Numbered from the whole stretch's first letter, positions 28,433 through 50,592 are shown. The stretch is 63,059 nt of DNA, filler included, from Octopus bimaculoides (GCF_001194135.2; 4 parts of 4 records of this genome joined end to end with filler, not necessarily neighbours in it); one strand, 5' to 3'. A program made the numbers and translations. The notes: generated by a model not told the origin, from the letters alone.

Positions 28433-28665
28433 TACTTGCCATGCAGAGGTTTCTGTTCCCATCTGCTAGCTAATTTTTCATGTGCTTTTGTCTTTGCAAT
28501 TAATTTTATTTTCTTTGCAGCAGCAGTTGGCGCACTTCCTTCAACCTGATCAAGTTGGTGGATATCTAAGAGTTCGGTAGCGAATTTTTTTGCTCTCTTT
28601 CAGAATAGAGTGAAGTCTTTTCGGTCTTTCATGTTTTTCAACAAGTTTCAGCATCCAATCGTTGG

Positions 28666-28716: not shown

Positions 28717-28996
28717 GATCATCATCATTGTCATTATTATTATTATTGGTAAGGCGGCGAGTTGGCAGACTCATTAGTGCGCTGAACGAAATACTTAGCG
28801 GTTTTTCGCCCGTTGCTAAGTTGTGAGTTCAAATTCCACTGAGGTTGACTTCGCCTTTCATCCTTTCGGGGTCGATTAATTAAATACCTGTGAAACACTG
28901 GGGACGATGTGATCGACATGTCCCCTTCCCCAGAATTTCAGGCTTTGTACCAATATTAGAAATGATTATTATTATTATTATTATTGATAAACTTAC

Positions 28997-29131
28997 TGAA
29001 CACAGGCAGGTAATTATTTGGACACAGTAGAATAGAATAAGGTAGAGACCTCAGGTAACGCGTCAGTACTTCTGCTATGTCGTAAGGTGTGTATCTTGCC
29101 TGTTTGATGTAATGAGATGCTGTGAAGCTAC
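28997..29131 (-). CDS. Exon (135 nt, phase 1-1): CSFTASHYIKQARYTPYDIAEVLTRYLRSLPYSILLCPNNYLPVF, RhoGAP core
   Basis: Acceptor tctttctgtttcctcttcAG, donor GTAAGT. DIAEVLTRYLRSLPYSIL matches the RhoGAP xIAxxLKxYxRxLPxPL motif. Confidence 0.92.
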
Positions 29132-30887
29132 CTGAAGAGGAAACAGAAAGACATTAATGAAGAAATAGACACATTATTGTGATTAGGATATATTAGTTAT
29201 AAGCTGTTAGATAATTTATCAGCAAAGCCTGACGATGATAAACTGATCAGAAATCAGGTGCTTCGGTAAATATACTGTTTCGACAAAACGCATGAGTTTA
29301 CTCCCGAGGTTCGATCCCAGAAAACCTATGTTTGGTTTCAAATCCGAGCGGGTAACAGATATAAGTATCAACCAAATAGTGGAATCAATACAACTCACCT
29401 TTCGCATCAATTTGTATCAGCATTTTTATATATTTTCTGGGGTTTTTTTTTTATTAGTTGACCAAACAGTAAAATACAGCGACAATGCCCATTTTCAGTA
29501 CTTCTGTGACTGGCGAGAGAAAGGGAACAAGTGATTTTCAACACGTGGAATCCACTACAGGAATCCAAGAGTTAAAGGTGCTGTTGAATCGCACCATTCC
29601 AAAAATAATAACAATCCTGCCGACAGACTTCCACACAGCCTAACAAATTTCATTTACAAGGCCTTCATCGACCCAAAGCATATTCTAGAAGACAGTAGCT
29701 GATGATACCACGCAATGGGATTCGAACCCGAAAACCCGTAGTTCTGAAATTAATTTCTTAACCACACAGTCATGCCTAATTTGTAGGATGCAAACAGTGT
29801 GTTCAAACCTTAGCAATACCTATCTTTTACTTGCTTCAGTGAAACAAATCGACCTCAGGACTTTTGTTTTTATAATCTGGTACTTTTGCTGAAGTTCTAA
29901 GTTACCAAGACGTAAATAAACTTAACACCGGCTGTCAAGCGATGAGAGGGGCAGATACAAGCACACACACATACAGAGAGAGAGAGAGAGGCACACACAC
30001 ATGTATGTATGTGTGTATGTATACGATGGGCTACTTTTAGTTTTCAGCTACTTTATCGACTCAAACAAACCCGCGGGTTACAGTGGAAGACACTCGCCCA
30101 ATGTGCCACGTAGTGGAACTGAAACTGAAACCATATGGTTGGGAAATAAACTTCTTACCAGACAGCCAAGGCTGCCAATAAGTTAAACTTTTAAGGCAGC
30201 GAGCTAACAGAAACGTTAGCACGCCGGGCGAAATGCTTAGCGGTATTTCGCCTGTCTTTACGTTCTGAGTTCAAATTCCGCTGAGGTTTACTTTGCCTTT
30301 CATCCTTTCGGAATAAATAAATTAAGTACCAGCCGCGTACTAGGGTCGATCTAATCGACTGGTCCCTAACTCCAAACCTTAACCCCCAAAATTTCGGGCC
30401 TTGTGCCTAGAGTAGAAAAGAATAAGTTACAATATTTGATCTTTCGATATAACAGTCGGGCATCTTAATGTCATTCAAATTCAGGGACCACCTGGGTGAC
30501 CTGTTTCATTAACTGTTGAATATTAGTTTGCTATGATAAGANNNNNNNNNNNNNNNNNNNNNNNNNNNNNNNNNNNNNNNNNNNNNNNNNNNNNNNNNNN
30601 NNNNNNNNNNNNNNNNNNNNNNNNNNNNNNNNNNNNNNNNNNNNNNNNNNNNNNNNNNNNNNNNNNNNNNNNNNNNNNNNNNNNNNNNNNNNNNNNNNNN
30701 NNNNNNNNNNNNNNNNNNNNNNNNNNNNNNNNNNNNNNNNNNNNNNNNNNNNNNNNNNNNNNNNNNNNNNNNNNNNNNNNNNNNNNNNNNNNNNNNNNNN
30801 NNNNNNNNNNNNNNNNNNNNNNNNNNNNNNNNNNNNNNNNNNNNNNNNNNNNNNNNNNNNNNNNNNNNNNNNNNNNNNNNNNNNNNN

Positions 30888-30932
<45 letters not shown>

Positions 30933-33900
30933 ATATGTTTGTGTCTCTGTCCCCCCAACATCGCTTGACAACCGATGCTGGTGTGTTTACGTCCCCGTAA
31001 CTTAGCGGTTCGGCTAAAGAGACCAATAGAATAAGTACTAGGCTTACAAAGAATAAGTCCTGGGGTCGATTTGCTCGACTAAAGGCGGTGCTCCAGCATG
31101 GCCGCAGTCAAATGACTGAAACAAGTAAAAGAGTACTATATCGTTGTATTAGCTAAATTTTGTTGTAGAAACGTATTTCATTGGATTATAGTAATATACA
31201 AACAAACAAGAGGACCTCTTCACGTCCGCTAAAAATAGCAATTAAATCTCTTTCAAATCACACTTCCTCCTTAAAAGGATACTGATGCACTACATACATT
31301 ATACAGTGTTTCCGTCCCCTTTTCTGCAGACTACTTGAAAGAAAAAGATAGTGTGTTTATGGATGGATCGCCTTTTATCAACGAGAGCTGTCTTGGGTCT
31401 ACGCAACAGAAAAACTAGAACATAGAGCGTTAAATTAATTTCTTACAGTATAGGTCATTTGAACGTGAATTTTTTTTTTCTTTTTGGAAGGATAGGGTGT
31501 GTACAGTTACAAGGCAGTACCTACAGCACACAAGCCTCGGAGCATTTGCATGCAGTGTTTCAATATAGCAACAAACCAATCAACAATTTTACAGTGCTAC
31601 CATTTTGTGCCATTGCCGTGTGTAAAAACAACAGCAACGGAAAGAGAAGCAGCAGTAGCAACACTGGAAGAACAGATTAAGACGAAAACAAAGAAGGATA
31701 CTTTATTTAATACTCTAATACTTACAAATATCAAAGACGGCAACTAGATCATTCACTCTTGTGTCATCTCCACGCATTATGTAAATAAATGACGTGTCCA
31801 AACCTTCGAGGAAAACAGAAAAATTAAAAGTGAGAGCTGCCATATGCAGGCATTATTTACATGTTACATGAAAACATCTGTACAATGAAAGGAAACAGCA
31901 ATAAAGCACCTCCTCCAACGTTACGTTTGAAGTTTGCAGAAGAAAGTTACTGCATTTGTAGATGTATATTTGGAGTATCTACATGACAACAGTACAGGTC
32001 TCAACAATATTCCTTCTAAAATGTATTTACTTGAATCATATTGTAAAGTAATTTTTAAAATAACAGCAAAACATTAAAGGGAGGCTTAAGGCTAAGTCTA
32101 GAAAAATGTATTAAAAAATTCGTTTTGATCGCAACTTTTAAGTTTCGCTTGACGGTTTATTCAACCAGTGATGAATAATTAAATATATTATACGATTGAG
32201 AAGAAAGAGAGGGAAGTGGGAGTTTTCCCTTAATGGCTGCAACCTTAAACTCCCATCTATCTATCTATCCATCTCTCTTTCTTCCCCCTCCTCTTTTCTA
32301 GCAAAACCACCTTACGCCCACTCCTAAATATTTAACCGCTTTCTTTCCTTTTCTTCTCATTGCATTATCAAATCTTCAGAGATGTACAATTTTCATTTGT
32401 AATTTTAGGTATGCTTGTTGCATTAGTGAAAACGTTACAATCACTGCTACTGCAATAACTGTGAAATGCGATTAAGGACAGAGTTTACATAGTTGGCATC
32501 TAGTGGAGAAGTGCCATGCACATATGTGTGTATGTGTGTATGGATGTGTAATCGTACCATCCTGCCTTTAGCACTATAAATGAACCAATCCAATCGTATA
32601 ACTTTTCTAAGCTAGCTGATAATTTTACAGAAAAGGTTCTGGTTACTAAAAAGTGTGGGAGAAATAAGACATAACTTTCGACTGACTCAAAAAACAACTG
32701 ACGTTCCTAAAGTTCGTGTTAGCTTTTGTGTAGTCTTGTGAAGGTTTATGAATAACATAGCCTAGTTATACGAGTGGGGTGGGGAATATTAATAACACTA
32801 ACATCGAAGAGTTAATAAAACTACAATGTCTTACCTCTTTGTTCTATTTCCTCAATACAGCTCGTTACAATCAGGGGAATCTTTCGCTCTTCACGCCTTT
32901 TCAAAACAATAAGGATGAATAACAACAACAATAATAATAATAATGATAATAATAATAATGATGACGATAAGGATGGCAATTTCCTTTATTTGCCACCAGA
33001 CCGAAGGATGAGGGGAACAATATGAAGACAGACATAAAGTGTGGAGGTTTACGTATAATAAAACGATGAAGACAAAGTTTTAAAAAGTATATATATATAT
33101 TTAAAAAATTCACTCGAGGACAGCACCACCCTCTCCACCCTCGCTTACCTTAACAAGTAAAACTTTAAAAAGACGATGAGGGCTCTACCAAAAAAGAATT
33201 TCTCTGTCCGCATGCCTTTCAACCTCGTTCACCAGACAACCTCTTTAGTCACAGCCACCAAGCAAAGGAGAACTACCTTATCTTCCCAATCAAAGGAAGG
33301 CGGCGGGGCAATCATCTCTATTGATTCTTATTTCTTTACTGCCCAAAAGGGGCTACACACAGAGGGGGCAAACAAGGACAGACAAACGGATTAAGTCGAT
33401 TATATCGACCTCAATGCGTAAGTGGTACTTATTTAATCGACCCCGAAAGGATGAAAGGCAAAGTCAACCTCGGCGGAATTTGAACTCAGAACGTAGGAGA
33501 CAGACGAAGTACCGCTAAGCTTTTCGTTAGGCGCGCCAACGATTCCGGCATGCCAACGATTCCGGCATGCCAAAGATTCCGGCATGCCAACGATTCCGAC
33601 ATGCCAACGATTCCGGCATGCCAACGATTCTGCCAGCTCGCAGCCTTTCTAATGATAATGATAATGATGGTTTCAAATTTTGGGACAAGGCCATAAGAAA
33701 AATAAAAACGAGATTCAAACCCAACCCGACCTCAGAAAATTAAATAGTAGATAACCATCACATGGCCTTACTCACTTCAAAACATCCTTTATGCATTGGC
33801 CGAACACTTTTCCACGCATGCGCCACATACGTAGAACATCGTCGTTAGAGGAATCTAACATAGTCCGCTGTTTCTCTTTGAATTCGTGAGCGAAAAATCG

Positions 33901-34595
33901 CACTGACATGACCAGGTATAGTCTCTGCAAGACAGAGTGAGAGTAAAGCATTGAGGAAGTCAAGGAAATGAGATAAGTGTTTTAGTTGTTGTTGTGGAGG
34001 ATGGGATCGGCATTTCGTTTTGTTTGTTTGAGGTCATTGTTGGCATCGTTGTGTTATGGTCTGTTCTGAAATTCTTTGAGAGTCTAACAAACAGAAAGAT
34101 ACAAGACTGACAGCTAGTCAACTAGCAGTGTATCTTACTGGAAGTAAATACAAAGATGAGCAGCTAAAGAAAGACAAAGATACATGCACCACCCATACGT
34201 TTACATAAAAGATGTATGTTCGTTTCTTTTTTGCATCTGTTATATTTCATTATTGATCTGCTATATTAATGAAGATATATCCTTTAATTTGCTGCTTTTC
34301 TTTAAACGAACTGAGATGATATGATACTTTGCAGAACTGTAATTTTAACGAGTTATATCTATTTATCACCCGAAGAGACACATCTACACCGTCGGATGTT
34401 CTCGAATCAGTCATTAAGTATCCCATCCGTGAGGAGTCGATGCTAGATGGGTCGAAACAATTGTAGTGATTAATAAAAATTCTTGATTCTTCCATCTTCC
34501 GTCTCTCTCGTTAACCAAATGCACAACGAACAGAGTGAAAGCGAACGTGCTTTACTGGTAACCTACCAGGTATAAACCATATCATTTATTATATA

Positions 34596-34659
<64 letters not shown>

Positions 34660-35717
34660 NNNNNNNNNNNNNNNNNNNNNNNNNNNNNNNNNNNNNNNNN
34701 NNNNNNNNNNNNNNNNNNNNNNNNNNNNNNNNNNNNNNNNNNNNNNNNNNNNNNNNNNNNNNNNNNNNNNNNNNNNNNNNNNNNNNNNNNNNNNNNNNNN
34801 NNNNNNNNNNNNNNNNNNNNNNNNNNNNNNNNNNNNNNNNNNNNNNNCAAGGACAAACAATTCGCGAGAAAAAATATAATTCTCGAAAATTAATTTGCTA
34901 AAATATTAATTTTGTTATCATCAGAAATGACTATTTAAAAAAATGATAATAACAGAATTAATAATATAGGTGATCGCAGGCCCAAGAAAAGCATTAAATA
35001 GCTGAAGGATTAAAATTAAAATTAATCAAAGGACAAACTAGGTATGTCTACTTGCTGGAAATAACAGTCAAAACTTATTTAAAGCGCCAAAGTTACACTG
35101 ATGATAACTACAGAAACCAACCGAAGAAGATCAGGTTAATAAAATCTCCTAACGTACATTTAAGTATAAGGAATCAAATAATATGATAAAATGATAAAAT
35201 GACGGGACGGCGACTGTGGGAAAGCCATTTAATGTATCGCTAAATGATCTGCTTCAACGGACCTGACCTGACGTGAAATAACAATAACAAAAGAAGAGGA
35301 AGGGATACAGGAAAAGAAAATAAATAAAAACAAATAAGAAGCCACGTAGCAACACTTACAGAATCGGCTGGTATCAACGGGACGGTAACCAAGCAGTAGT
35401 GATCGCTGAGATATGCTGTGTGGAGCTGACAACAAAAGATAATTTAAGATTGAGACCCTTCTATTCGCCGTAACACTCGGTTATATTACATTTCTGCTAT
35501 AGGCACAAGGTCCGAAATTTGTGGGGTCAGGGACCAGTCGATTAGATATACACCCCACCCCCCACATCCAGTACGAAACTGGTACTTAATTTATCGACCC
35601 CGAAATGATGAAAGGCAAAGTCGACTTCGTCGGAATTTGAACTCAGAACGTAGCAGCAAAAGAAATACCGCTAAGCATTCCGCCCATCGTGCTAATGATT
35701 CTGCCAGCTCACCAATA

Positions 35718-35763
<46 letters not shown>

Positions 35764-37935
35764 GTGTGTGTGTGTGTGCGCGTGTGTGTGCGCGTGTGTG
35801 ACGTCGCTTTCGCGTGACTGATGACATATAACCCATTTCAACGTTTTGCATGGTTGAGTCGTCGGCGACTAAACCGGCAACCCCATCCAATTTGGCTTAG
35901 TGAGGAAGGTGATTTTTTTTTTAGCGAAGGGGCACCCTGAGGGATGGAAAAGAAGACTCGTAGAAGGGTGGAGGAACTCAGCAGAGTTAATAGCCATCCA
36001 TAATAGTCATGGGTAGATGGTACCCATCAGTCGTGTGAAGACAAGCCATATAGTAGAATGAAATCGCGAGAAAGGGTTTTATTTCAGAGATTTTTATGAA
36101 CACATGCTTACAAACTGATGATCGTTCTGGCTCAGGCACTATTGGTAACGCGAAGCAATGGAATCCCAAACATTAGGAAACATTTTGTTCGATAGTTGTG
36201 CGCACTCTAGTTCAATATCGTCGACTGTCGGCAGTTGCAATCATACTTTTTTAAGTACTTCCCCTTTTAAAAATTTTTAGTGGTGTGAGGTCTGTTGAAC
36301 ACGGAGGGTTTTCAACTGAACCCTTTCTTTCAATTAATCTATTTGACAAAATCTCATCAAAGTAGGCCGTTACATTACTACAGCAGTGGTGAGGTGTCCC
36401 ATCTTGTTGGAAATATTAAAAGATCAAATACGACAGACATTATTGTTGACAAACAGTTGAAACATAGCGTCCTATATGTGCTGATTGTCAATTTAATTAT
36501 CACTGAATTTGAGATCACGTGTTAATAACTGAGAGTACCTGGACATTTTGATATTAAAAGAAGACAAGATCGCGAGCTGGTAGAATTGTTAGCACGCCGG
36601 GTGCAATGCTCAACAGCATTTCATCCATCTTTACGTTCTGAGTTCAAATACGGCCGAGATCAACTTTGCCCTTCATCCTTTCGGGGTCGATAGATATCAA
36701 TTGAGTACTGGGTTCGATGTAATTGATTTACTCTCTCCTAAAATTTCTGGCCTTGTACCAAAATTTGTAATCGTTATTAAAACGAGACAAGATAGCGAAC
36801 GGGCAGAATCATAACGCGCCGGACAAATTGCTTAGCGGCATTTTTTCCGGCTTTACGTTCTAAGTTCAAATTCCGTCGAGGTCGACTTTGCTTTTCATCC
36901 ATTTGGGATCGATAAACTCACGTAAAACTTGTTGGGAAAATAATGATAATATTGGTTTAAAAGTTTTGACGCAAGGCTACCAATTTCGAAGGAGGGGGCA
37001 CGTCGATTACATGACCCCAGCGCTCAGCTGGTACTTAAATTATCAACGCCGAAAGGATAAAAGGTAAAGTCGACCTCAGTAAAATTTGAACTCGAGAACG
37101 GACGAAACACTGTTAAGCATTTTGCTCGGCGTGCTAATGATTGCGCCAGCTCATCGCCTTGAGTACAATAATAATATGTCTGAAGTAAAAATCCAAATGC
37201 AATTAGAAAAATAAACATTAAATAGAAAGCATAAATAAAAATATTCTAATTACAATAATGATGCAAAACGAAATTTAAAAAACAAAACTTGCTAAATGTG
37301 ATTTGGGGTCCGGCAACAAATCGCAAACTTTTGTCTATTTACTTCGAATGTACCCATAGCGAAAAACTGGAAATCCTGGAATGTGCTTGGGTTACGTTTG
37401 TAGGCGTTGATCCTCAACGTTTGAGAACAGTTCAATGATATTTCAAACTTCTGATCAAAAATTAGGTCTCTGCTCATTTTTGTGATGTCACTTGTGAAAA
37501 CTCTGGAGAAAAATCCGCCTAAGTAGTCGACTTGCAAGGTTAAAAATACGTCTGCTGGAAATATGGTAAGAAGAAAAATACAATTGTAGAAAGTCGTACG
37601 TATAAAAGTTACAAAGATATGTTGGGTATGTGGTAAAATGATTTGGGTCTAAGTTGCAACGGATGTGATGGGAATATCGATTAAAAGACAATAAAACAAG
37701 TGTATTAGTATTATTTTTATTTTTTACTTGTTTCTGTCATTGGATTGCGGCCAGGCTGTGGCACCGTCTTGAATGGTTCAGTCGAAGAAATTGATCCCAG
37801 TACTTACATGCTCTTTAAAGTTTGCTATTTATCTATAGTTAACATTTGCCGACCCGCTAAGTTACAGGAAAATAAACAAACTCCGGTGTGAAGAGGTGAG
37901 GTGACAAACATACATATTAAAAAGGCATACACGTA

Positions 37936-38174: not shown

Positions 38175-40088
38175 AAGTAGTCCGGATTATATATTTGTCA
38201 TATATGCCTTACTGAAATTTTTCCAGAAAAAATAACTTTGACTTTGAAGTACTCTCTCCTTGAGAGAGTATTCCCTGCCAAAGTAAGTGAAAAACCCCAC
38301 CAGATACGGTATTAAAAGCTATTAACGAAATTGGAGTATTTACAGCAGTGTAATGAACCCTCATTCTGGCAGATTAACGCCTGTCTATATTCCCTGTCTA
38401 CATAAACGACATTTAAAAAGTGAACAAAACCCAAACAACGAAGAAAGTGCCATCATAGGGTTTGAAGACAGAGAAAAAGATAGGACATTTGCGGAAAACC
38501 ATCAGGCATGTGATGATGCTCATTGCGTGCAAACAAGCAAATCACTATATGTTTCACCAAGAAGAAGTGAAGAAGGAGATAGAAGTGATGTTTGGAAACA
38601 GCAAAAGGAGGTCACTCACTTGCAAACTAATCATCCTCAAGCAGGAGCTAAAAGCTGTCAGTGAGAAACTCCGACATCAGAAGAGAATAACCGAGAGAAA
38701 ACAATAAACGAAAAATTTAATTGGAACCACGCAGCAGTGTACAGACATGAAAGGTAAAGCAGTCAGCATCACAGGAGTTCCTTCACCAGAAGACATAGAC
38801 TCCTTCTAGAAGAAAATCTGGAGTGAAGAGGAGTTTAACCAAGATGCTCTGTGGCTGGAAGAAATTCGAAGTTATTGTCCATGCATTACACCCAAGACAT
38901 ACATCTTTGATGGTGATACCTTTGTAAATGTGACCCAGAAACTTCAGGATGGAAAAGCACATCCCTTCAGCAATATCTTTTAACTACCAAGTGTCGAAGT
39001 GCATCCCTTGACCAAGTTTGCATACATGAAGCTGATAACATCATAAGACTTGGAAAGCAGTTCCTTGAGCAGCGTTCCTTGTCTGATAACCTTAAATACA
39101 TACCCAAAGAAGTTGCACAACTCTACCGCAACATACCATTAGAGGAAAAGATGAACGTATATAAGCAGAAGACCATGCGTGGATATGTTTGTAGAAAGCT
39201 CCTGGATGTTAGTAGCATTGATCATCAAAGCAATCTATCATGGACCAACAAACGGGTTACTAACTTCCACTTTGAAAGGTATGCATTTGCAATCCAGGAA
39301 CAAGAAATATCAACTTGATACACAAAAAGGACAGAGATGCATGAAAAGCAGCAAAATGCGATAACCTATGCAGACTTTGTGGAGTTAACACCAAAGATAT
39401 CACCCACATCATAAGCAGCTGTTTGCAAATGTCATCACGGTATTATCTGCCGATGAGATACGATGTTGTAGCTAGGTTACTGTATAACGAAATCCGTTGG
39501 AAGGATAAACCTGAGTACAAAGAAGTAAGAACCTACAGTATGGCGGAAGTTATAGCCACTCCTAATTAAAAGGAATACTGGTGGAATGTCCCAGTGAAAA
39601 CCTCAATAAAATGTAAACATAATAGACCTGACGTAGTAGTTTGGGACAAAGAGAAACTGGGCACAGCTGTGGAAATCAACTGCCCAGCAGATGTTAGCAT
39701 AAAGCTAAAGATCAGCGAAAAAGAAAATACCCACACTGAACTATTGAGAAATCTACAGTCACTCTATCCAGATTACATGTTCAGGTTTACACCTGTAACT
39801 ATTGGGCCACTGGGACATGTAACACACTGCCTAAATACCAATCTTGAGAAATTAGGCTTCTCAAAACCAGAAAGGAGAAAGCTGGTTTGAAAACTACGGA
39901 TCCAAGCCATCACTGGAATTGTAAAAATTGGTAAAACTTTCCAGAAGTTCATCATGTAAGTATATATATGAGCATGTCTAGACTTGCAAGTATATGCATG
40001 AGAAGACAAAACAAAACATATAAATCAAAAAATATAAAACAAAAACATATAAATCTGCACATATAATACAGTCATGCATACATGCATG

Positions 40089-40119
<31 letters not shown>

Positions 40120-41569
40120 ACACATACACACACATACACACAAACAAACAAGCAAACACGCAAACACGCATACATTCAAAAATATCCTTTTGATGTTGAA
40201 ATTCCAACGAAGGAACCTCGGATCTAGGTTAGAAACTGAGTCTTTCTATATTGGCAAAAAACCTTGGAATAAAACTGAATAATGACATACATACATACAT
40301 ACATACATACATACATACATACATACGTAATATAAAATACTGGCACTCCATCGATTACCACGACGAGGGTTACAGTTGATCCGATCAAAACTTCTGTCAA
40401 ATGTAAACATAAACAGGCCGGATATTGTTGTTTGAGACAGACGGGCAAAGGTACGTATCATCATAGAGGTCAGCTGCCCTGCAGATATAAATATCTCTTT
40501 GAAAAATCAAAGGAAAAGAGGATATTTATGGACAACTCCTCGAAACCTCTAGCTTCTATATCCAGATTATGAATTCATATTCATACCAATAATAATTGGA
40601 GCATTTGGTTTTGTTAGTAAATGCTTAAAGGAGAATCTGGATAAACTGGGATTTTCAGGAAGAGAAATCGACCGGCTAATTCGTACATTACAAGTCCAAT
40701 CTGTGAGTGGAACAGTAAAAATATGCAATATTTTTCCCAGGTTCCAAATGTGAATTTGTCTGTGTTAATTACATCCCAAGAATTGAGCCTTGTATGTTTG
40801 TTGGAAGTCGGCTCTCTCCTCAGTGGAAGATTTCTAATAATTAATAAATAGAAGAGAAATACATAAAGGCGCACATATATTCTTGAATCCCACCACAGAC
40901 ACACACGTCAAACCTCTTATGTAAACCATTCCAGACGTGACAAGATCATCCTATTGGACATATAGCACCCAGGATCACATTACCTAACGTGATCCTTTTA
41001 TTAGGTCTAATCTGAAGGAATTTTATCTGATATTTCTATCGAAACAAGCGATCATGTAGAATCCCTCTTGTTGCTTCAACACGCACATATTGACGCAGAA
41101 GCATAAACACACAGACAGACACAAGCACACGAATACACACGAATAACACATGCACAAATATGCTAACACACATAGATATACATACGCGTATACACTCACA
41201 GACCGAGGCATATGCACACAAACACACATATACACACAAATATACACATACAGGTAGAGGTAAAAAAAAGAAAGAGGCAAATGAAACCACTCACCTGTGT
41301 CTAATACAATCCCCCTCATTTGATGCAAATAGACATCGAGGGTCCCCTCATAGAAATTCAGCGGGTTATCTGTGGATTAAATACAGCAAGCATCGTTATA
41401 ATATAGCGATAGTGTTTGAGTGATTGAGATGAAAGTGTTTGAGATGAAAGTTGGACGTGATAATAGAGATGCAGTAAATGTTGTAATAGTGGTGGTCGAG
41501 GCTACAGTGGTGATGGTAGGGGTACTGGTGGTGGTGGTGGTGGTGGTGGTAGTGGTGGTGGTGGTGGTG

Positions 41570-41600
<31 letters not shown>

Positions 41601-43332
41601 GTGGCGGCGGCGGCGGCGGCGGCGTCGTTGTCGTCGGCGGCGTCGTGCTGCTGCTGCTGCTGCTGGTGATACGGGTGCTGCTAGTGTTTGTAGAGGGGCT
41701 GCTGCTGCCTATAGAGGTGCTGCTGCTAGTGCTGCTGCTGCTGGTGGTGTTTGTAGAGGTGCTACGGCTACTGGTGATGATAGCAGGCTGTCATTGACAT
41801 TGGATGAACTGATACTGGAGGTATGTTAATTGTGGCATTAATAGGTGGGGGAGGGGTGTCAGATTTAGAGATGATGGCAGTGGACTTCGTTCAAATAATT
41901 TTGATAGCGTTTGTGCTTTCCCTGTCTTTCCTTTTCCTCACTACAATCTCCACTTATATTCTGAAGAAGAACTATATCCGAAACGTCACAATTAACTATT
42001 ATCCAGTTTTCCCTGCGTCAAAATAATTATTTTGAATAAAAGCTTGTCTATGCTTTTATGCTTGTATATAAATATACACATCGGTATGAGGTAGAAAGTA
42101 ATTTCATGGCCAATCAAAAACCAAAACCGGTATAACTACTGGTTATTGATCGGCTGCGAAACAATTCCAATATTGTAATATGATTACAAGAATGATACTG
42201 ATATAAGCTAGCTAGTAAAACATAAGTATTAGATGTGACTTAAGCTTTGGAAATAGGCATTTGATATAATTGCAAACTTGAACTCTCAGCAGGCACTGGA
42301 GGTGTTGTTCGCAACTCTATCTCACCCAACATCCCGTGTTGGGATGTTTTTCATGTTAAACTGTATTAGTAGTCTAAAAATTATTAGAAATGCTGATGTG
42401 ATGAGATTAGGTTAATCACCAAGCCAGCCAACTAGTAGAAACGTTAGTATGCCGAGCAAAATGCCTACCGACATTTCGTCCATGTTCTAAGTTCAAACTC
42501 TGCCGGAGTCGACTCTGCCTTGCAACCCATTGAACACTGAAGTTGATGTAATTGACTAACTCCCAGCCCCGAATCTGCTGGTTTGTGCCAGAAAATTGAA
42601 ACCAATACTAGTTTAATCATTGCATCAAGGAATAGCGGGGTGTAATTCCAAAAATGTTCCAGACTTATTAGCTCTCTTCAGCGGAGTATAAACTTTATCA
42701 TACCGGTCCACCTTGTTATTTACTTACTTAAATATTTTACTTATTTAAATATTGCAGTATTTCTACCACCACCCCGTCAGGCTCTGTTTTGTACATGTAC
42801 TTATTATTAATTTCCTTAGCCCTACGAGAAAAGTATATACCCAGCAGAGAAGGACTTATAGGACCAAAACATGCCTGGAGTTGCCTTCCTTACTTGGCAA
42901 AAATGTTTTTAAATAATGGAGTTTTTTCTCCGTTATGTTTATGTCTTTTTCTTACAACTAAAATATTTATAATTAGATTTCTAATATACGTTTCATTACG
43001 TTGACACTATCTTAAGTTCTGCTTCTCAGACAGCCTTTCTGTACAATTAATGATAGAGTTTTTCATAGTTAATAGATAACTGAGAATAAAAATGTTTTTT
43101 TCTGCTTACTTGCGTTGCTCAGACTAGTCAATCTTGGAATCTGCCAAAATAAAGAAAAGATTTCAACACTGAAATAGACGCGAACGTGGCTGTGCGGTAA
43201 GAAGTTTGTTGCCCAAACATATAATCCTGGTTCAATCCCACTACGTGGCACATTGGGTAAGGATGTTCTGCAATAGCCCTGAGCCAACAAAAGCCTTGTG
43301 TGTGTGTGTCTATATATTGTAGATAGATAGAC

Positions 43333-43384
<52 letters not shown>

Positions 43385-43733
43385 GACTGTATGTGTGGTG
43401 TAACTCTGTGTGAGTGGCTTTGTTTTCGCATATCTCTCCACCACCACTTGACAACCGGTGTTGGTTACTAACGTCCCCATAACATAGCGGTTCACCGATA
43501 GAATAAGCACCAGGCTTAAAAACAATGGTTACTGGAGTCGATTTGTTCTCACTAAACTCCTTAAGCTGATGCTCCAGCATGGTCGTTTTCAAACGACTGA
43601 AATAAATAAAAGATGAAATACTTAAGATATGAAATTGCTCGTATCTGAAAAGAATTTTACTTTCTGGTTTGAGTCTTCTGTAGACTATTTCGATGGAGAG
43701 AAACAAAAGGTGAAAATATTTAGATGATGAACA

Positions 43734-43768
<35 letters not shown>

Positions 43769-45747
43769 ATATAGATATTAATATATTTACAGAACAGACT
43801 TACATGGAGAACAAAGATACATGAAATTAAGGGGAGGAAGCATGGTAAAGAGATTGGTATCTAATATACCAATCTCTCCGCCCTGCAGACGATAATCAGA
43901 TTAACGTAATGTTTCTATGCATCGACTTCTGGTTACATATTCTTGACATTTTGCACACTCCATCTGCTAATATTGCAAATATTACGGATTTCCGATGTCC
44001 CAGAAACAGTTGTCGGACCTGAAATAACATGCCCTCATCCCGGAGTCCATGTAAATATTTTCTGTAAATATATAAATACCTATATGCTTTTATATGAATG
44101 TTCATGTGAATATTTTCAGTTTTTGCTTCTGTCTCTCTCTCTATATATATATCCTTAGATACGTATCGTGATCAATAAGTATCCGGAGTGTTGCTATAGT
44201 AACGAAGCTAAAGCACGCAGAGTGAAGCTGCTTGGCACGGATTGACCTTGAACTCTGCTCTGCATGTTGCACTAAGTTTTAACGTTCTAGTTCACTTTCA
44301 CAGTTTACAGCAGTGTTTGGAAGGAAGATTTGTATCATGTGATCGTCGCATTGGCCATGACAGAGAAAGTTGAGCAGAAAATCTGCATCAAATTTTGCCA
44401 AAAGCTTGGCGATACCAACTCAGAGGCCTACTCAAAGTTTTCAAAATGTTTTCATCGTTCACGATACAATCAAGTATATCTTGTGCAACTGAAACCCCAG
44501 TGTCCTTTTGGTTAGCTGAAAGCAGTTTTGTCAGAAACAGGCAGACACGCGTCTCATACCCAAATCTTCAGTGATAATGGACTGAACTGAACCGTAACTA
44601 ATCTGCACATCCTCTGATAAATCACGGATGGCGATTCGACAATTCCCTCTCACAGCTGCATGCATATCTACGAGGTTTTTTCTCAGTTTTGCTGGTTGTG
44701 GGTCACCTAGAACATTTGTCACTATCGACATTTTTCGGCCACTTGTGAGCGGCTCATACAATCCTCTCCATACACTTTCTGCAACTCTGTGCATGCCTCT
44801 GAGCAGGTATCACCATGAAAATTTTTTCTATCACGGTCAATGCGTCGATCACACACTACACACCTTCCTTCCAAGCACTGCTGTAAACAGCAGAAGCGAG
44901 TTAGAACGTTAAAACTTAGTGCGTATACACATCAGTCTTCAAGATCAATCTGTGCCAATCCGTTTCACTCTGCGTGCTTTAGTTTAGTTACTATGGCAAC
45001 AGGATATTTATTGATCAGACCTCGTATATATATTTACATGCCAATATATGTAGTTATATTTCATTTATCAATCCCAAGCGTGCTTACTTGTTTATTTGCA
45101 TCATTGTCTCCATATCAGTTCAACTGGATTCCTCTTATAGCCAATCTTTACCCCGAGGACTTAGTCCTCGATAAAGATTTCGAAGTGTAACTTCAAATCA
45201 TTTGAGTACTACTGTTTTCTATATTGAAGATCTTTGGATCTCTTCTGTTGACTACATGTGTGTGTTTACGTGATTATGTATTTATGTCTCCGTAACTTAG
45301 CGGTTCTACAAAACAAGCCATTTGAATAAGTACTACGCTTTCAAAGAATAAGTCCTGGGGTTGATTTCTTCGACTAAAACCTTTAAGGCGGTGCTCCAGC
45401 ATGACCGCAGTCAAATGATTGAAACAAGTAAAAGAATAAAAGAATATATATATATATATATATATATANNNNNNNNNNNNNNNNNNNNNNNNNNNNNNNN
45501 NNNNNNNNNNNNNNNNNNNNNNNNNNNNNNNNNNNNNNNNNNNNNNNNNNNNNNNNNNNNNNNNNNNNNNNNNNNNNNNNNNNNNNNNNNNNNNNNNNNN
45601 NNNNNNNNNNNNNNNNNNNNNNNNNNNNNNNNNNNNNNNNNNNNNNNNNNNNNNNNNNNNNNNNNNNNNNNNNNNNNNNNNNNNNNNNNNNNNNNNNNNN
45701 NNNNNNNNNNNNNNNNNNNNNNNNNNNNNNNNNNNNNNNNNNNNNNN

Positions 45748-45801
<54 letters not shown>

Positions 45802-46564
45802 GTGTGTGTGTGTACAGACATATAGTCAGGTGAAGAAAACTGTTTAAAATGGTAGACATCGACTTACTATTCCGTAATTTGCTATACAACTCTCATATGC
45901 CACCAGATCCATATCTAAGAGAGAGAAAAAAAAAGGATATTCATTTCGTTCATTTAATCTCAAATACAAACGACAAGTTTAATGGGTCGCATGGACTTAA
46001 ACCATGTCGGTAAAATATAAACATGATGGTAAGAAAAATTGGAAGACAACACTAGGAATGAATTGGAAATTTTAGAAATTTCCTGAGGGCGGGACAGTAT
46101 TATCTCTGTGTCCACTACCATGTAGCTCTCATCTGTTTATGCTATGCACGTGTTGCTGGAGCATTTCATTGTTTGGCATATGACACACTAACATACATGC
46201 GATATTCTTACGATTGCTCATTTACATATCTGCAAACACGGAAATATCATCCAGTCTACTCTTAAGTAGTTGGTGTTAGGAAGGGTATCCTATTGTAGAT
46301 ACCATGCCAAAGCTGACATAGGAAATGGTGGTTCTATATCTGACTCCTCTGTTCTTGTCAAACCATCCAGTCATGCTAGCATAGATAAAAAGGATAATGA
46401 TAATGATGATGATGATGATGATGATGATACATACATGTACATGCATGTAAATACAAACACATACACACACATATATATATGCACAAACAAATGCATACAC
46501 ATACACGCACACACACTCTCCCTCCCTCCCTCTCCCTCTCTCTTTCTCTCTAAGTAAATATGTC

Positions 46565-48328: not shown

Positions 48329-48955
48329 CCATCTCAACATCTTACACCAAACTTCCAATGATTTCTTGTACAGAAAGCTCAAAACATTCCATAGTTTTGT
48401 TAAGGCAATTTTGTCTCCTTCAGCAACACAAATATTCTAACAAAACATATCAAAAACATTACATATTAAGTGCTATATTCATAACCCTAGCTAACCTTGG
48501 ATAACAGGCAACCAGATCATCAAATTGCTACTAGTACTAGACTTCATTATCATGATGATCTTTCATAGCAAACGCACATCATCAAGCAACCGACAACTGC
48601 ACCGTGAGACAAACAAAACCAGATGCGTACAACAGATATACTCTTTCTGCAGTATTTACAAGACTTTTATGTTGATATAAACACACATTTGGCACCTAAG
48701 GAATAATGATATACGTATAAAAATAAACTGAGCAATTGTAAACAATTGCGAAACTACAACTACACACACTCTCACACGCATACACACCCAATATATTTCT
48801 TTTATATTTATTTGTTTCAACAGAAACAAATCCACAGCAGAAAAAAATATTCTTGCATTATTACTTACACGCGTAATCATGATTTTCGATTAGGTCTTTC
48901 CAAGTTTGGTATTCAACTCGCGAGAAAAATAGTAAATGGTAATATTTTTTGTCGA
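28997..48955 (-). CDS. Spliced gene, partial (>=10 exons): divergent BCR/ABR-like PH-C2-RhoGAP protein; 5' and 3' exons not located
   Basis: Ten exons with AG/GT boundaries join in one open frame with matching phases (1,1,0,1,1,0,0,2,1,1,1). The peptide follows the BCR/ABR order: PH C-terminal helix, C2 (LQVDYLG...FEISLNCSQTLRI), linker (VFGQCI), RhoGAP start (KREERKIPLIVTSCIEEIEQRG). Compared with BCR from memory, not by search. Confidence 0.88.
31726..31803 (-). CDS. Exon (78 nt, phase 1-1): GLDTSFIYIMRGDDTRVNDLVAVFDI, RhoGAP arginine-finger segment with Arg replaced
   Basis: Acceptor tttttctgttttcctcgaAG, donor GTAAGT. Aligns without gaps to BCR [25 protein letters not shown]. Confidence 0.92.
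32835..32896 (-). CDS. Exon (62 nt, phase 2-1): KREERKIPLIVTSCIEEIEQR, RhoGAP helix A
   Basis: Acceptor ttgttttgaaaAG, donor AG|GTAAGA. Close match to BCR KRERSKVPYIVRQCVEEIERR. Confidence 0.95.
33535..33630. repeat. 17-bp minisatellite GCCAACGATTCCGGCAT, 5 full units plus a partial, inside a family B SINE head
   Basis: Units start at 33535, 33552, 33569, 33586 and 33603; two carry one substitution each. Confidence 0.95.
33776..33924 (-). CDS. Exon (149 nt, phase 0-2): RLYLVMSVRFFAHEF...RMRGKVFGQCIKDVL, end of C2 and pre-GAP VFG motif
   Basis: Acceptor ctttactctcactctgtcttgcAG, donor GTGAGT. Resembles BCR VKLSVKFNSREF...TGVFGVKIAVV. Confidence 0.9.
34425..34470 (+). ncRNA. Decayed hammerhead motif
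   Basis: (G)TGAGGA...GAA ACAATTGT A GTGAT. Perfect 8-nt palindromic helix III; C3 lost and helix II disrupted. Confidence 0.35.
35360..35425 (-). CDS. Exon (66 nt, phase 0-0): LHTAYLSDHYCLVTVPLIPADS
   Basis: Acceptor atcttttgttgtcAG, donor GTAAGT. Position matches BCR LDPQALQDRDWQRTVIAM. Confidence 0.85.
37343..37554 (-). CDS. Exon (212 nt, phase 1-0): ADVFLTLQVDYLGGFFSRVFTSDITKMSRDLIFDQKFEISLNCSQTLRINAYKRNPSTFQDFQFFAMGTFE, C2 core
   Basis: Acceptor tttttcttcttaccatatttccAG, donor AA|GTAAAT. Aligns to BCR LEVDSFGYFVNKAKT...[20 protein letters not shown]. Overlaps track ORF 37292-37537. Confidence 0.92.
38280..39960 (+). mobile_element. R4/Dong-like non-LTR retrotransposon, internally deleted and degenerate
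   Basis: GVPSPEDIDSF*KKIWSEEEFNQDALWLEEI, YAFAIQEQEIST, CRLCGVNTKDITHIISSC and KCKHNRPDVVVWD...VEINCPAD. The RT catalytic core is absent. Confidence 0.8.
40390..40760 (+). mobile_element. Second, diverged R4/Dong-like endonuclease 3' fragment
   Basis: KCKHKQAGYC-like start, IIEVSCPADINISLK and FIFIPIIIGAFGFV are collinear with 39600-39950. Confidence 0.75.
41295..41369 (-). CDS. Exon (75 nt, phase 1-1): NNPLNFYEGTLDVYLHQMRGIVLDT, first C2 strand
   Basis: Acceptor tttaatccacAG, donor AG|GTGAGT. Resembles BCR LYGFLNVIVHSATGF. Confidence 0.85.
41956..41992 (+). ncRNA. Degenerate minimal hammerhead motif in a Penelope-like 3' remnant
   Basis: CTGAAGA AGAACTATATCC GAA ACGT C. Core intact; helices I and II eroded. 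Confidence 0.45.
43110..43140 (-). CDS. Exon (31 nt, phase 0-1): IPRLTSLSNA
   Basis: Acceptor cttttctttattttggcAG, donor GTAAGC. Phase-compatible; resembles the BCR IPLT segment before C2. Confidence 0.65.
44162..45024 (-). mobile_element. Non-autonomous mariner derivative with fold-back ends (two 5' ends), TA TSD
   Basis: TA-CGTATCGTGATCAATAAGTATCCGG ... GGATATTTATTGATCAGACCTCG-TA. MTEKVEQKICIKFCQKLGDT on + and ...SYGSVQSIITEDLGMRRVSA on -. Confidence 0.88.
45868..45914 (-). CDS. Exon (47 nt, phase 1-0): YMDLVAYESCIANYGI, PH-C2 linker
   Basis: Very strong acceptor tttttttttctctctcttAG and donor GTAAGT. Only one frame is open, and it is phase-compatible with both neighbours. Confidence 0.72.
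46645..47640 (+). mobile_element. Penelope-like (Neptune-type) RT C-terminus and GIY-YIG endonuclease, frameshifted
   Basis: LPFLDILI...TDLYYKPTDSKQYLSFNSCHP, Cys linker CGRPKCGKC, and NLIYALTCSGC*EQYIGQTK. A diverged ~150-bp tandem duplication follows (47600-47760 / 47855-48000). Confidence 0.88.
48869..48955 (-). CDS. Exon (87 nt, phase 1-1): xDKKYYHLLFFSRVEYQTWKDLIENHDYA, PH-domain last strand and helix
   Basis: Acceptor actacAG, donor GTAAGT. Resembles BCR KSYTFLISSDYERAEWRENIRE. Confidence 0.8.
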
Positions 48956-49199
48956 CTGTAGTTATTAGAGTGAGTTTCAAATGTGGGAGCATGAGTGCAA
49001 GAGAGGCTTCCTAGATTTAGAAAATAATTAAAAGCAATATGGCGGATAAAATGATCGGGAGTAGGTTAGACACGTTCTCAGTAAAGTTCAATAAAGATAT
49101 TTCTGATAAAGATATAGTTTCTATAGAAGTCTCATCTGTATAGTATGTTATATATAGGTGTAACAGAACTAGTGAACTAGTCTTTAACTCAACTCCACG

Positions 49200-50233: not shown

Positions 50234-50592
50234 TTTGAATTTTTTTCCAATAATAATATTGTATATGACTTAGGATGCTTGCCTTGCTTTAATGTTTGTT
50301 GTCCTCTTTAACAATTATATATATATANNNNNNNNNNNNNNNNNNNNNNNNNNNNNNNNNNNNNNNNNNNNNNNNNNNNNNNNNNNNNNNNNNNNNNNNN
50401 NNNNNNNNNNNNNNNNNNNNNNNNNNNNNNNNNNNNNNNNNNNNNNNNNNNNNNNNNNNNNNNNNNNNNNNNNNNNNNNNNNNNNNNNNNNNNNNNNNNN
50501 NNNNNNNNNNNNNNNNNNNNNNNNNNNNNNNNNNNNNNNNNNNNNNNNNNNNNNNNNNTATATATACATATATATATACATATATATACATA

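What the first reader, a model, noticed from the sequence alone, without database searches (positions are those of the whole stretch)
28997..33924. Hidden BCR/ABR-like gene whose RhoGAP domain lacks the arginine finger (candidate pseudo-GAP)
Seen: four consecutive exons translate to VFGQCIKDVLKREERKIPLIVTSCIEEIEQRGLDTSFIYIMRGDD...DIAEVLTRYLRSLP. Established: active RhoGAPs carry GIYRxxG (the catalytic Arg) and a conserved Lys in LKxYxRxLP. Here the Arg position is Ile (codon ATA), the preceding Gly is Phe and the Lys is Thr, while structural residues, splice sites and frame are intact. A-to-I editing of ATA gives Val or Met, not Arg, so recoding cannot restore it. Inference: a maintained but catalytically dead or repurposed BCR/ABR paralogue, a Rho-binding scaffold in the manner of Arg-less GAP domains such as C. 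elegans SYD-1 or OCRL. The Arg two residues later might partly substitute.
Basis: partly seen in the sequence, partly recalled or inferred. Interest (0 to 1): 0.78.

Follow-up and report, generated by a model that had tools for sequence, protein, structure and literature searches.

The report
Octopus BCR-like gene with dead GAP domain
This is a real, already annotated Octopus bimaculoides gene from a small octopod-only family of BCR/ABR-like proteins whose Rho-GAP domain has lost its catalytic arginine, so it is a new example of a known kind of "dead enzyme" domain.

Summary
On the minus strand, four exons (33776-33924, 32835-32896, 31726-31803, 28997-29131) have canonical AG/GT splice sites. 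The arginine-finger position is Ile (ATA, 31778-31780), the preceding Gly is Phe, and the partner Lys is Thr (ACG, 29061-29063). The N gap (30542-30887) lies inside intron 9. Gap-free orthologous loci in O. sinensis and Argonauta hians show the same exon 9/10 junction and no alternative GIYR exon.

The gene is not hidden. It is RefSeq XP_014790547/8/9 "breakpoint cluster region protein" and UniProt A0A0L8I5W8. It belongs to a monophyletic octopod family of three old paralogues (A, B, C). All lack the Arg (I/V, I, L) and the Lys (T/L, L, M/V). A canonical GIYR-bearing BCR/ABR co-exists in Argonauta.

The reading frame is conserved:
- Octopus-Argonauta dN/dS is about 0.15.
- The exons have no indels, against about 0.8 gap-opens per 100 bp in the introns.
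- The GAP exons are 3.6% diverged, against 8.8% for the introns.

The ortholog models as a confident RhoGAP fold. The Arg two residues downstream is not conserved, so it is unlikely to substitute. Verdict: a maintained pseudo-GAP paralogue, a new member of a known kind, of modest interest.

The parts
48869..48992 (-). Coding exon 1 of the RefSeq model (end of the PH domain: MLPHLKLTLITTVDKKYYHLLFFSRVEYQTWKDLIENHDYA). The open frame continues upstream of the annotated Met (EASLAL...).
   Evidence: the O. vulgaris model P0004 continues upstream into PH exons
45868..45914 (-). Coding exon 2
43110..43140 (-). Coding exon 3
41295..41369 (-). Coding exon 4 (start of the C2 domain)
37343..37554 (-). 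Coding exon 5, the C2 core (..CSQTLRINAYKR..). A NAGNAG acceptor (37554 or 37551) gives isoforms X1 and X2.
   Evidence: weak C2 Pfam hits in the orthologs; beta-sandwich in the AF2 model
35360..35425 (-). Coding exon 6 (LHTAYLSDHYCLVTVPLIPADS)
33776..33924 (-). Coding exon 7: end of C2, linker and start of the RhoGAP-like domain (..RMRGKVFGQCIKDVLK)
32835..32896 (-). Coding exon 8 (REERKIPLIVTSCIEEIEQRG)
31726..31803 (-). Coding exon 9: degenerate finger loop LDTSFIYIMRGDDTRVNDLVAVFDI
31778..31780 (-). Codon ATA (Ile264) at the arginine-finger position (p50RhoGAP Arg282). It is GTA Val in O. sinensis and GTG Val in Argonauta.
29132..31725 (-). Intron 9. It contains the assembly gap 30542-30887, a SINE-like copy and the alternative terminal exon of isoform X3 (29454-29509).
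28997..29131 (-). Coding exon 10 (CSFTASHYIKQARYTPYDIAEVLTRYLRSLPYSILLCPNNYLPVF). The rest of the domain lies beyond the piece.
29061..29063 (-). Codon ACG (Thr305) at the conserved Lys position (p50RhoGAP Lys319). Arg309 (AGG, 29049-29051) keeps the Arg323 position.
   Evidence: PMC8305018

Best explanation
The region is the 3' half of an annotated Octopus bimaculoides gene. The gene descends from the BCR/ABR family (DH-PH-C2-RhoGAP) and belongs to an octopod-specific cluster of three old paralogues.

Shown here:
- The RhoGAP-like domain keeps the RhoGAP fold.
- It has lost the catalytic arginine finger (Ile/Val), the Gly before it, and the partner Lys (Thr).
- In the complete orthologs it has also lost Asn391 and Val394 of the Rho-binding surface.
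- The loss is shared by all three paralogues, so it predates the Octopus-Argonauta split.
- The reading frame and exon structure have been kept since then.

Inferred, not shown:
- The domain cannot accelerate GTP hydrolysis.
- It serves as a non-catalytic module, either a binding or an autoregulatory domain, of a BCR-like DH-PH-C2 protein.
- Ordinary Rac/Cdc42 GAP activity is left to the canonical BCR/ABR gene that co-exists in octopods.
For: - Exon model. Ten exons with canonical splice sites reproduce XP_014790547.1.
- Domain identity. RhoGAP Pfam hits score 59-100 bits for family members.
- Residue mapping. Alignments to solved RhoGAPs and to canonical BCR/ABR give R282->I/V/V (A), I/I (B), L/L (C); K319->T/T/L, L/L, M/V; N391->I, A, S; V394->G, R, L. 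A review names Arg282 and Lys319 as the defining basic pair, and Arg323, Asn391, Val394, Pro398 as binding determinants. It lists Arg-less RhoGAPs as inactive (PMC8305018).
- Family. Members are O. bimaculoides P0151/P0002/P0003, O. sinensis P0157/P0153/P0156, O. vulgaris P0004/P0159 and Argonauta P0158. The family is monophyletic with 100% bootstrap.
- Canonical copy. The Argonauta protein (P0017) has GIYRVSG, LKLYFRELP and NLAVIFG.
- Selection. Octopus-Argonauta pS is about 0.70 and pN about 0.27, giving omega 0.14-0.18. Exon sizes and phases are identical. There are 0 indels in 979 exonic nt against 0.79 gap-opens per 100 bp in introns (P=4e-4). The GAP exons show 11 differences in 307 nt against 8.8% in introns (P=2.7e-4).
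- Fold. The AF2 model of the O. sinensis ortholog has pLDDT 84-97 across the GAP domain. Foldseek TM-scores are 0.84-0.88 to Myo9b, chimaerin and p50 RhoGAP domains.
- No alternative exon. No GIYR-bearing exon exists in any of the three loci.
Against: - No transcript or protein evidence was examined. Expression rests only on the existence of RefSeq isoform models.
- dN/dS between O. bimaculoides and O. sinensis is 0.86 overall and about 1.0 upstream of the GAP domain. Recent constraint outside the GAP-like domain is therefore weak or mixed with positive selection.
- The O. bimaculoides copy cannot be seen whole. The 5' DH-PH exons and the last exon fall beyond or inside assembly gaps.
- Catalytic inactivity is inferred from sequence precedent, not measured.
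- A canonical BCR/ABR was shown in Argonauta, not directly in O. bimaculoides.
Confidence: 0.72

Rival explanations
1. It is a non-functional duplicate on its way to becoming a pseudogene. The missing catalytic residues are simply decay.
For: - Omega is 0.86 overall and 1.04 for the pre-GAP part between O. bimaculoides and O. sinensis.
- Exonic divergence upstream of the GAP domain (61/672, 9.1%) equals intronic divergence (8.8%).
- Gene models are fragmentary in every species.
- No expression data were seen.
Against: - The frame is open across 420 codons and 12 exons in three species separated by saturated synonymous divergence (pS about 0.70), with omega about 0.15.
- All splice sites are canonical.
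- There are no indels in 979 nt of exon (P=4e-4). The chance of no stop after 72 random substitutions is 0.043.
- The GAP exons are significantly more conserved than the introns (P=2.7e-4).
- All three paralogues are retained in both Octopus species.
- Model fragmentation is explained by assembly gaps.
Confidence: 0.1
2. It is still an active GAP that uses a non-canonical catalytic residue, for example the Arg of IMRG two residues after the finger position, or a residue supplied in trans.
For: - O. bimaculoides and O. sinensis both keep Arg at +2 (CGT).
- The finger loop and fold are otherwise well modelled.
- Arg323 and Pro398 are kept in paralogue A.
Against: - The +2 residue is Gln in Argonauta, Lys in paralogue B and Pro/Asn in paralogue C.
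- Lys319, Asn391 and Val394 are also replaced.
- Known Arg-less RhoGAP domains are reported inactive (PMC8305018).
Confidence: 0.08
3. It is an artefact: the true transcript uses another exon, possibly hidden in the N gap, that supplies GIYR.
For: An unsequenced stretch (30542-30887) lies between exons 9 and 10.
Against: - The gap is downstream of exon 9, which already encodes the finger loop.
- Gap-free O. sinensis and Argonauta loci contain only the Arg-less exon 9 and the same junction.
- tblastn with canonical finger-exon peptides finds no other candidate in any locus.
- The length between FD and LP matches canonical BCR to within two residues, and the same two extra residues are present in the cephalopod canonical proteins.
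Confidence: 0.02

Closest known systems
BCR / ABR (DH-PH-C2-RhoGAP proteins; canonical invertebrate ABR-like proteins such as Argonauta hians GAB1608419.1 and Limulus XP_022253185.1)
   Same: - C2 lies immediately before the RhoGAP domain.
- DH-PH lies upstream: RhoGEF hits in paralogues P0153/P0156 and in the gene fragment just upstream in L004 and L001.
- The best hits outside the family in a search of 1.84 billion proteins are ABR/BCR proteins, aligned across C2 plus GAP.
- RefSeq names it 'breakpoint cluster region protein'.
   Different: - Only 21-28% identical to any canonical member over C2 plus GAP.
- The finger Arg, the preceding Gly, Lys319, Asn391 and Val394 are replaced.
- All domain HMM scores are far lower: RhoGAP 59-100 against 151-159 bits, RhoGEF 17-32 against 70-100 bits.
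- Proteins are about 700 aa rather than 1300-1500 aa.
- No Bcr oligomerisation region was seen.
Arg-less RhoGAP-like domains (OCRL1, INPP5B, p85 alpha/beta BH domain, ARHGAP36, DEP1/DEP2, FAM13B; C. elegans SYD-1)
   Same: - RhoGAP fold without the arginine finger.
- As in p85, residues around the finger and some binding determinants are also lost (PMC8305018).
   Different: - Independent origin inside the BCR/ABR lineage and a different domain architecture.
- Restricted, as far as these databases show, to octopods.
- Present as a three-gene family.

Membership tests
RhoGAP domain (Pfam PF00620) | Significant match to the family profile | tested here: met
   E=6.9e-12 for the four exons. E=5.2e-16 for XP_014790547. 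E=1.4e-22 and 5.8e-24 for the complete orthologs.
RhoGAP domain (Pfam PF00620) | All-helical RhoGAP fold | tested here: met
   AF2 model of the O. sinensis ortholog (94% identical over the window's GAP exons): pLDDT 84-97 in the domain. Foldseek TMt is 0.84-0.88 to 5c5s, 2osa and 1tx4. The window's own copy is incomplete in the assembly.
Catalytically active RhoGAP | Arginine finger (p50RhoGAP Arg282, GIYR motif) | tested here: not met
   Ile (ATA, 31778-31780). Val in O. sinensis and Argonauta. Ile or Leu in paralogues B and C.
Catalytically active RhoGAP | Conserved Lys (p50RhoGAP Lys319, LKxY) | tested here: not met
   Thr (ACG, 29061-29063). Leu in Argonauta. Leu, Met or Val in the paralogues.
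Catalytically active RhoGAP | Rho-binding determinants Arg323, Asn391, Val394, Pro398 | tested here: inconclusive
   Arg323 is kept (AGG, 29049-29051). Asn391, Val394 and Pro398 lie in the last exon, which is missing from the O. bimaculoides assembly. In the O. sinensis and Argonauta orthologs they are Ile, Gly and Pro.
Catalytically active RhoGAP | Stimulation of GTP hydrolysis by a Rho-family GTPase | not testable with these tools
   Needs a biochemical assay.
BCR/ABR family | C2 domain directly N-terminal to the RhoGAP domain | tested here: met
   Exons 4-7 align to the C2 of ABR/BCR proteins (query 2-202 aligned). Weak C2 Pfam hits in the orthologs. Beta-sandwich in the model.
BCR/ABR family | DH-PH (RhoGEF) module upstream in the same gene | tested here: met
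   This lies outside the piece. A 342-aa RhoGEF-bearing fragment lies upstream on the same strand across a 4174-N gap (L004). The O. vulgaris model P0004 joins its PH exon (L004 687-752) to this gene's exons. Paralogues P0153 and P0156 carry RhoGEF plus C2 plus RhoGAP in one model.
BCR/ABR family | Groups with BCR/ABR rather than other RhoGAP subfamilies | tested here: met
   Every hit outside the family whose alignment spans C2 plus GAP is an ABR/BCR-like protein. The exact branching point relative to canonical molluscan copies is unresolved (24% bootstrap).
Pseudo-GAP (maintained non-catalytic RhoGAP-like domain) | Loss of catalytic residues combined with purifying selection on the domain | tested here: met
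   Omega for the GAP part is 0.14 (Octopus-Argonauta) and 0.35 (O. bimaculoides-O. sinensis). The GAP exons are more conserved than the introns (P=2.7e-4). There are no indels.
Pseudo-GAP (maintained non-catalytic RhoGAP-like domain) | Expression of the protein | not tested
   No transcriptome data were reachable. Only the existence of RefSeq isoforms X1-X3 is known.

The most novel reading that the evidence does not exclude
Octopods carry a lineage-specific, physically clustered family of three BCR/ABR-derived genes. In their common ancestor the GAP domain was converted into a non-catalytic module: finger Arg, Lys319, Asn391 and Val394 were all replaced. The DH and C2 domains are also strongly diverged. 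The GAP-like domain stays constrained while the PH-C2 part evolves at a near-neutral or adaptive rate. On this reading, the family has a new function that may not depend on GTPases and is specific to octopod cell biology.
Probability: 0.35. Interest if true: 0.5.

Novelty: new member of a known kind. Interest (0 to 1): 0.3.

Why it matters
RhoGAP-like domains without an arginine finger are a recognised class of pseudo-enzymes. No BCR/ABR-type example appears in the review read here, and a full-text search found no paper on octopus BCR-like genes.

If the family is expressed, it offers a natural experiment. BCR/ABR normally combines a GEF and a GAP in one protein. Here the GAP half was silenced early in octopod evolution, and the genes were then kept and duplicated. 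That could show what a RhoGAP fold does when it no longer catalyses.

For annotation, the result also shows that the O. bimaculoides RefSeq models for this gene are truncated by assembly gaps, and that the name 'breakpoint cluster region protein' overstates functional equivalence.

Tried and rejected
1. My first guess for the small exon between the C2 exon and exon 7 (about 34365-34475, MEESRIFINHYNCFDPSS...) was wrong. It has no polypyrimidine tract, and the annotated protein and orthologs use 35360-35425 instead.
2. A possible next exon at 28435-28599 (KKFATELLDIHQL...) was considered. It does not fit the RhoGAP consensus. The real exon 11 lies beyond the piece (L004 32644-32757).
3. The first word-index homology search with the 141-aa peptide found nothing, although an identical RefSeq protein exists. 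This is a limit of the tool, and the full HMMER scan found the protein.
4. The third word-index search, with the Argonauta canonical C2-GAP, returned only proteins under about 750 aa. It did not return an Octopus canonical BCR/ABR, so co-existence is shown only for Argonauta. P0163 is a cephalopod-like canonical fragment from run SRR25114244 whose species I could not determine.
6. Exact-product look-ups of P0001 and P0156 found nothing on record.
7. Intronic ORFs that look like transposon remnants mostly gave no Pfam hit. Only a weak mariner HTH_48 match appeared.
8. ARAGORN found no tRNA-like genes in the SINE-like repeats.
Full report
**What is in the sequence**

The finding lies on the minus strand. 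Four exons carry it: 33776-33924, 32835-32896, 31726-31803 and 28997-29131. Each is bounded by a canonical AG acceptor and GT donor. Joined, they read RLYLVMSVRFFAHEFKEKQRTMLDSSNDDVLRMWRMRGKVFGQCIKDVLKREERKIPLIVTSCIEEIEQRGLDTSFIYIMRGDDTRVNDLVAVFDICSFTASHYIKQARYTPYDIAEVLTRYLRSLPYSILLCPNNYLPVF.

The peptide matches Pfam RhoGAP (PF00620) at E=6.9e-12. phmmer alignments to solved RhoGAP domains (ARHGAP15, ARHGAP12, N- and beta2-chimaerin, RLIP76) are unambiguous:
- LD-TSFIYIMRG aligns to LD-VDGIYRVSG.
- LTRYLRSLP aligns to LKxYxRxLP.

So the finger Arg is Ile (ATA, 31778-31780). The Gly before it is Phe. The conserved Lys is Thr (ACG, 29061-29063).

**The assembly gap**

The N run 30542-30887 lies inside intron 9 (29132-31725), downstream of the exon that encodes the finger loop. 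Exon 9 ends in phase 1 (T) and exon 10 starts GT, giving Cys.

Two orthologous loci contain no N: L001 from O. sinensis and L002 from Argonauta hians. Both have the same two exons, of the same or nearly the same size, and the same junction peptide (VFDICSFTAS and VFDMCSITGS). The O. sinensis intron aligns on both sides of the window's gap. The extra sequence in the window is a SINE-like copy plus (TA)n/(TG)n repeats.

tblastn with canonical finger-exon peptides finds no second, GIYR-bearing exon in the window, L001, L002 or L004. Nothing coding is hidden in the gap.

**The gene is annotated, not hidden**

A full HMMER scan of 1.84 billion representative proteins returned a 99%-identical protein. 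It is RefSeq XP_014790548.1. Its cluster mates are XP_014790547.1 and XP_014790549.1, "breakpoint cluster region protein isoforms X1-X3" of Octopus bimaculoides, also UniProt A0A0L8I5W8.

Ten exons in the piece reproduce residues 1-326 of X1 exactly. These are 48869-48992, 45868-45914, 43110-43140, 41295-41369, 37343-37554, 35360-35425 and the four above.

The piece equals L004 6551-30560 of assembly GCA_001194135.2 (chromosome CM046606.1), and large N runs bound it on both sides. The RefSeq model is truncated at both ends by these gaps:
- **5' end.** A 342-aa RhoGEF-bearing "gene" upstream on the same strand is the N-terminal half of this gene. The O. vulgaris model P0004 joins its PH exon (L004 687-752) to this gene's exons.
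- **3' end.** Exon 11 is at L004 32644-32757. The last exon has no counterpart. The O. sinensis interval 40726-46450 falls on an unsized 100-N gap. The model's stop codon is a read-through of the intact donor AA|GTAAGA.

The real product is therefore most likely DH-PH-C2-RhoGAP-like, as in the paralogue models of 698 and 743 aa.

**A family, not a single oddity**

The same searches found two further O. bimaculoides paralogues on the same chromosome. B is XP_014782258. C is XP_052824455, also A0A0L8GCV6. Their O. sinensis and O. vulgaris orthologs were also found, along with an Argonauta hians ortholog of the window's gene that is 56% identical. In both Octopus species paralogue B lies tail-to-tail just downstream of this gene.

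A neighbour-joining tree of the C2-GAP region groups A, B and C with 100% bootstrap on a long branch. Argonauta A sits inside clade A, also at 100%. The attachment point to canonical BCR/ABR is unresolved.

Residues at the functional positions, in p50RhoGAP numbering:

| Position | A (O. bim. / O. sin. / Argonauta) | B | C |
|---|---|---|---|
| Arg282 | I / V / V | I / I | L / L |
| Lys319 | T / T / L | L / L | M / V |
| Arg323 | R / R / R | K | L |
| Asn391 | I (orthologs) | A | S |
| Val394 | G (orthologs) | R | L |
| Pro398 | P (orthologs) | A | Y |

A review names Arg282 and Lys319 as the characteristic basic pair. It names Arg323, Asn391, Val394 and Pro398 as binding determinants. It lists ARHGAP36, CNTD1, DEP1, DEP2, FAM13B, INPP5B and OCRL1 as Arg-less and inactive (PMC8305018).

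The loss of the finger therefore occurred before A, B and C diverged, and before the Octopus-Argonauta split.

The Arg two residues after the finger (CGT, 31772-31774) is Gln in Argonauta, Lys in B and Pro/Asn in C. It is not a conserved substitute.

A canonical copy exists in octopods. Argonauta hians GAB1608419.1 (1515 aa) has GIYRVSG, LKLYFRELP and NLAVIFG. It scores RhoGAP 151 bits, RhoGEF 78 bits and C2 33 bits. I could not retrieve the O. bimaculoides canonical gene with the tools.

**Is it maintained?**

I rebuilt the orthologous coding sequences exon by exon.

- **Octopus against Argonauta.** Synonymous sites are saturated (pS about 0.70) and pN is about 0.27. This gives omega 0.14-0.18 overall and 0.14 for the GAP part. 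Exon sizes and phases are conserved.
- **O. bimaculoides against O. sinensis, overall.** Omega is 0.86 (dS 0.087, dN 0.075). It is 0.35 in the GAP part and 1.04 upstream of it.
- **Intron baseline.** Collinear intron alignments differ at 8.8% of sites, with 0.79 gap-opens per 100 bp.
- **Exons against that baseline.** The exons have no indel in 979 nt (P=4e-4). The GAP exons differ at 11 of 307 sites (P=2.7e-4). The pre-GAP exons differ at 9.1%, the same as the introns. Seventy-two random substitutions would leave the frame free of stops only 4% of the time.

The frame and the GAP-like domain are under purifying selection. The PH-end, linker and C2 part has recently evolved at a near-neutral rate, which I cannot explain.

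**Fold**

I modelled the complete O. sinensis ortholog (P0157) with AlphaFold2. It is 94% identical to the window's protein over the shared GAP exons. Mean pLDDT is 80.7, and 84-97 across the GAP-like domain. The model shows a beta-sandwich C2 followed by an all-helical domain. Foldseek against the PDB gives RhoGAP domains as top hits. These include Myo9b 5c5s, N-chimaerin 2osa (rmsd 2.1 Å) and p50RhoGAP complexes 1tx4 and 2ngr, with target TM-scores of 0.84-0.88.

**Interpretation**

Shown:
- The gene is a BCR/ABR-derived, octopod-restricted paralogue.
- Its RhoGAP fold is intact and constrained.
- The fold lacks the catalytic Arg, the partner Lys and, in the complete orthologs, two of four listed binding determinants.

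Inferred:
- The domain is catalytically inactive.
- It acts as a non-catalytic module of a DH-PH-C2 protein.
- Whether it still binds a Rho GTPase is open and rather doubtful.

Rivals:
- A decaying duplicate. Deep conservation, no indels and retention of all three paralogues argue against it. The recent omega near 1 outside the GAP domain and the lack of expression data argue for it.
- A non-canonical active GAP. The non-conservation of the +2 Arg and the loss of Lys319 argue against it.
- An assembly or annotation artefact. This is excluded by the gap-free orthologous loci.

**Comparison and novelty**

The gene resembles the known Arg-less RhoGAP-like domains (OCRL, INPP5B, p85 BH, ARHGAP36, DEPDC1, FAM13B, SYD-1), but it arose independently inside BCR/ABR. 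It fails the membership test for "active RhoGAP". It passes those for "RhoGAP fold" and "BCR/ABR architecture".

A full-text search found no paper on octopus BCR-like genes. I rate it a new member of a known kind. It is modestly interesting, mainly because it is a three-gene, lineage-specific family rather than a single oddity.

Noticed in passing
window 29454-29509 (minus), inside intron 9: This is the alternative terminal exon used by RefSeq isoform X3 (XP_014790549; ...VFDI|FTEVLKMGIVAVFYCLVN*). It has acceptor ccag|TC and stop TAA at 29454-29456. It would truncate the protein right after the finger loop, removing most of the GAP-like domain.
   Followed up: partly
window 37551-37554 (minus), acceptor of exon 5: A NAGNAG acceptor (ccag|CAG|ACG) explains isoforms X1 (..LDTADVF..) and X2 (..LDTDVF..).
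   Followed up: partly
L004 1-2240, 2377-6550 (N), 32644-32757, 36121-36220 (N): The RefSeq O. bimaculoides models are truncated by assembly gaps. The upstream 342-aa RhoGEF 'gene' is the 5' half of this gene. The last coding exon is missing from the assembly. The annotated stop after ...DHMAK is a read-through of an intact donor (AA|GTAAGA).
   Followed up: yes
L004 41734-42760 and L001 51536-55191: Paralogue B (XP_014782258 in O. bimaculoides; XP_036359602 in O. sinensis) lies tail-to-tail downstream of this gene in both Octopus species (about 6 kb in O. sinensis, about 9 kb from exon 11 in O. bimaculoides), so the family is physically clustered. In Argonauta the downstream neighbour is a 7tm_1 receptor gene instead (L002 34252-35202).
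   Followed up: partly
window exons 1-7 (48992 down to about 33800): Between O. bimaculoides and O. sinensis the PH-end, linker and C2 part has dN/dS about 1.0 and the same divergence as the introns. The same region has omega about 0.17-0.22 against Argonauta. This could be recent relaxation or positive selection. It is unexplained.
   Followed up: partly
alignment (window residues about 288-300, IKQARYTPYD): The Arg-less family and the two cephalopod canonical BCR/ABR sequences share a two-residue insertion before the helix carrying Lys319. Other molluscs, Limulus, Lingula and human BCR lack it. This may mark a duplication within cephalopods.
   Followed up: no
window 28828-28845, 30270-30287, 33467-33484, 35624-35641, 36865-36882, 37073-37090: At least six copies of a SINE-like repeat (core TTCAAATTCCRCYGAGGT) lie in both orientations in the introns. 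About 0.01 matches are expected by chance. ARAGORN calls none of them a tRNA.
   Followed up: partly
window 44725-44931 (minus), 46699-47408 (plus), 39594-39890 (plus), 36254-36415 (minus): Intronic ORF fragments look like transposon remnants. Only a weak mariner HTH_48 match (E=0.002) was obtained for 44725-44931. The others gave no Pfam hit.
   Followed up: partly
window 34660-34847, 45469-45747, 48262-48271, 50328-50558, 51245-52147: Five further N gaps lie in the piece, all intronic or upstream and mostly flanked by dinucleotide microsatellites. Window sequence above about 49280 does not align to the O. sinensis upstream region.
   Followed up: partly
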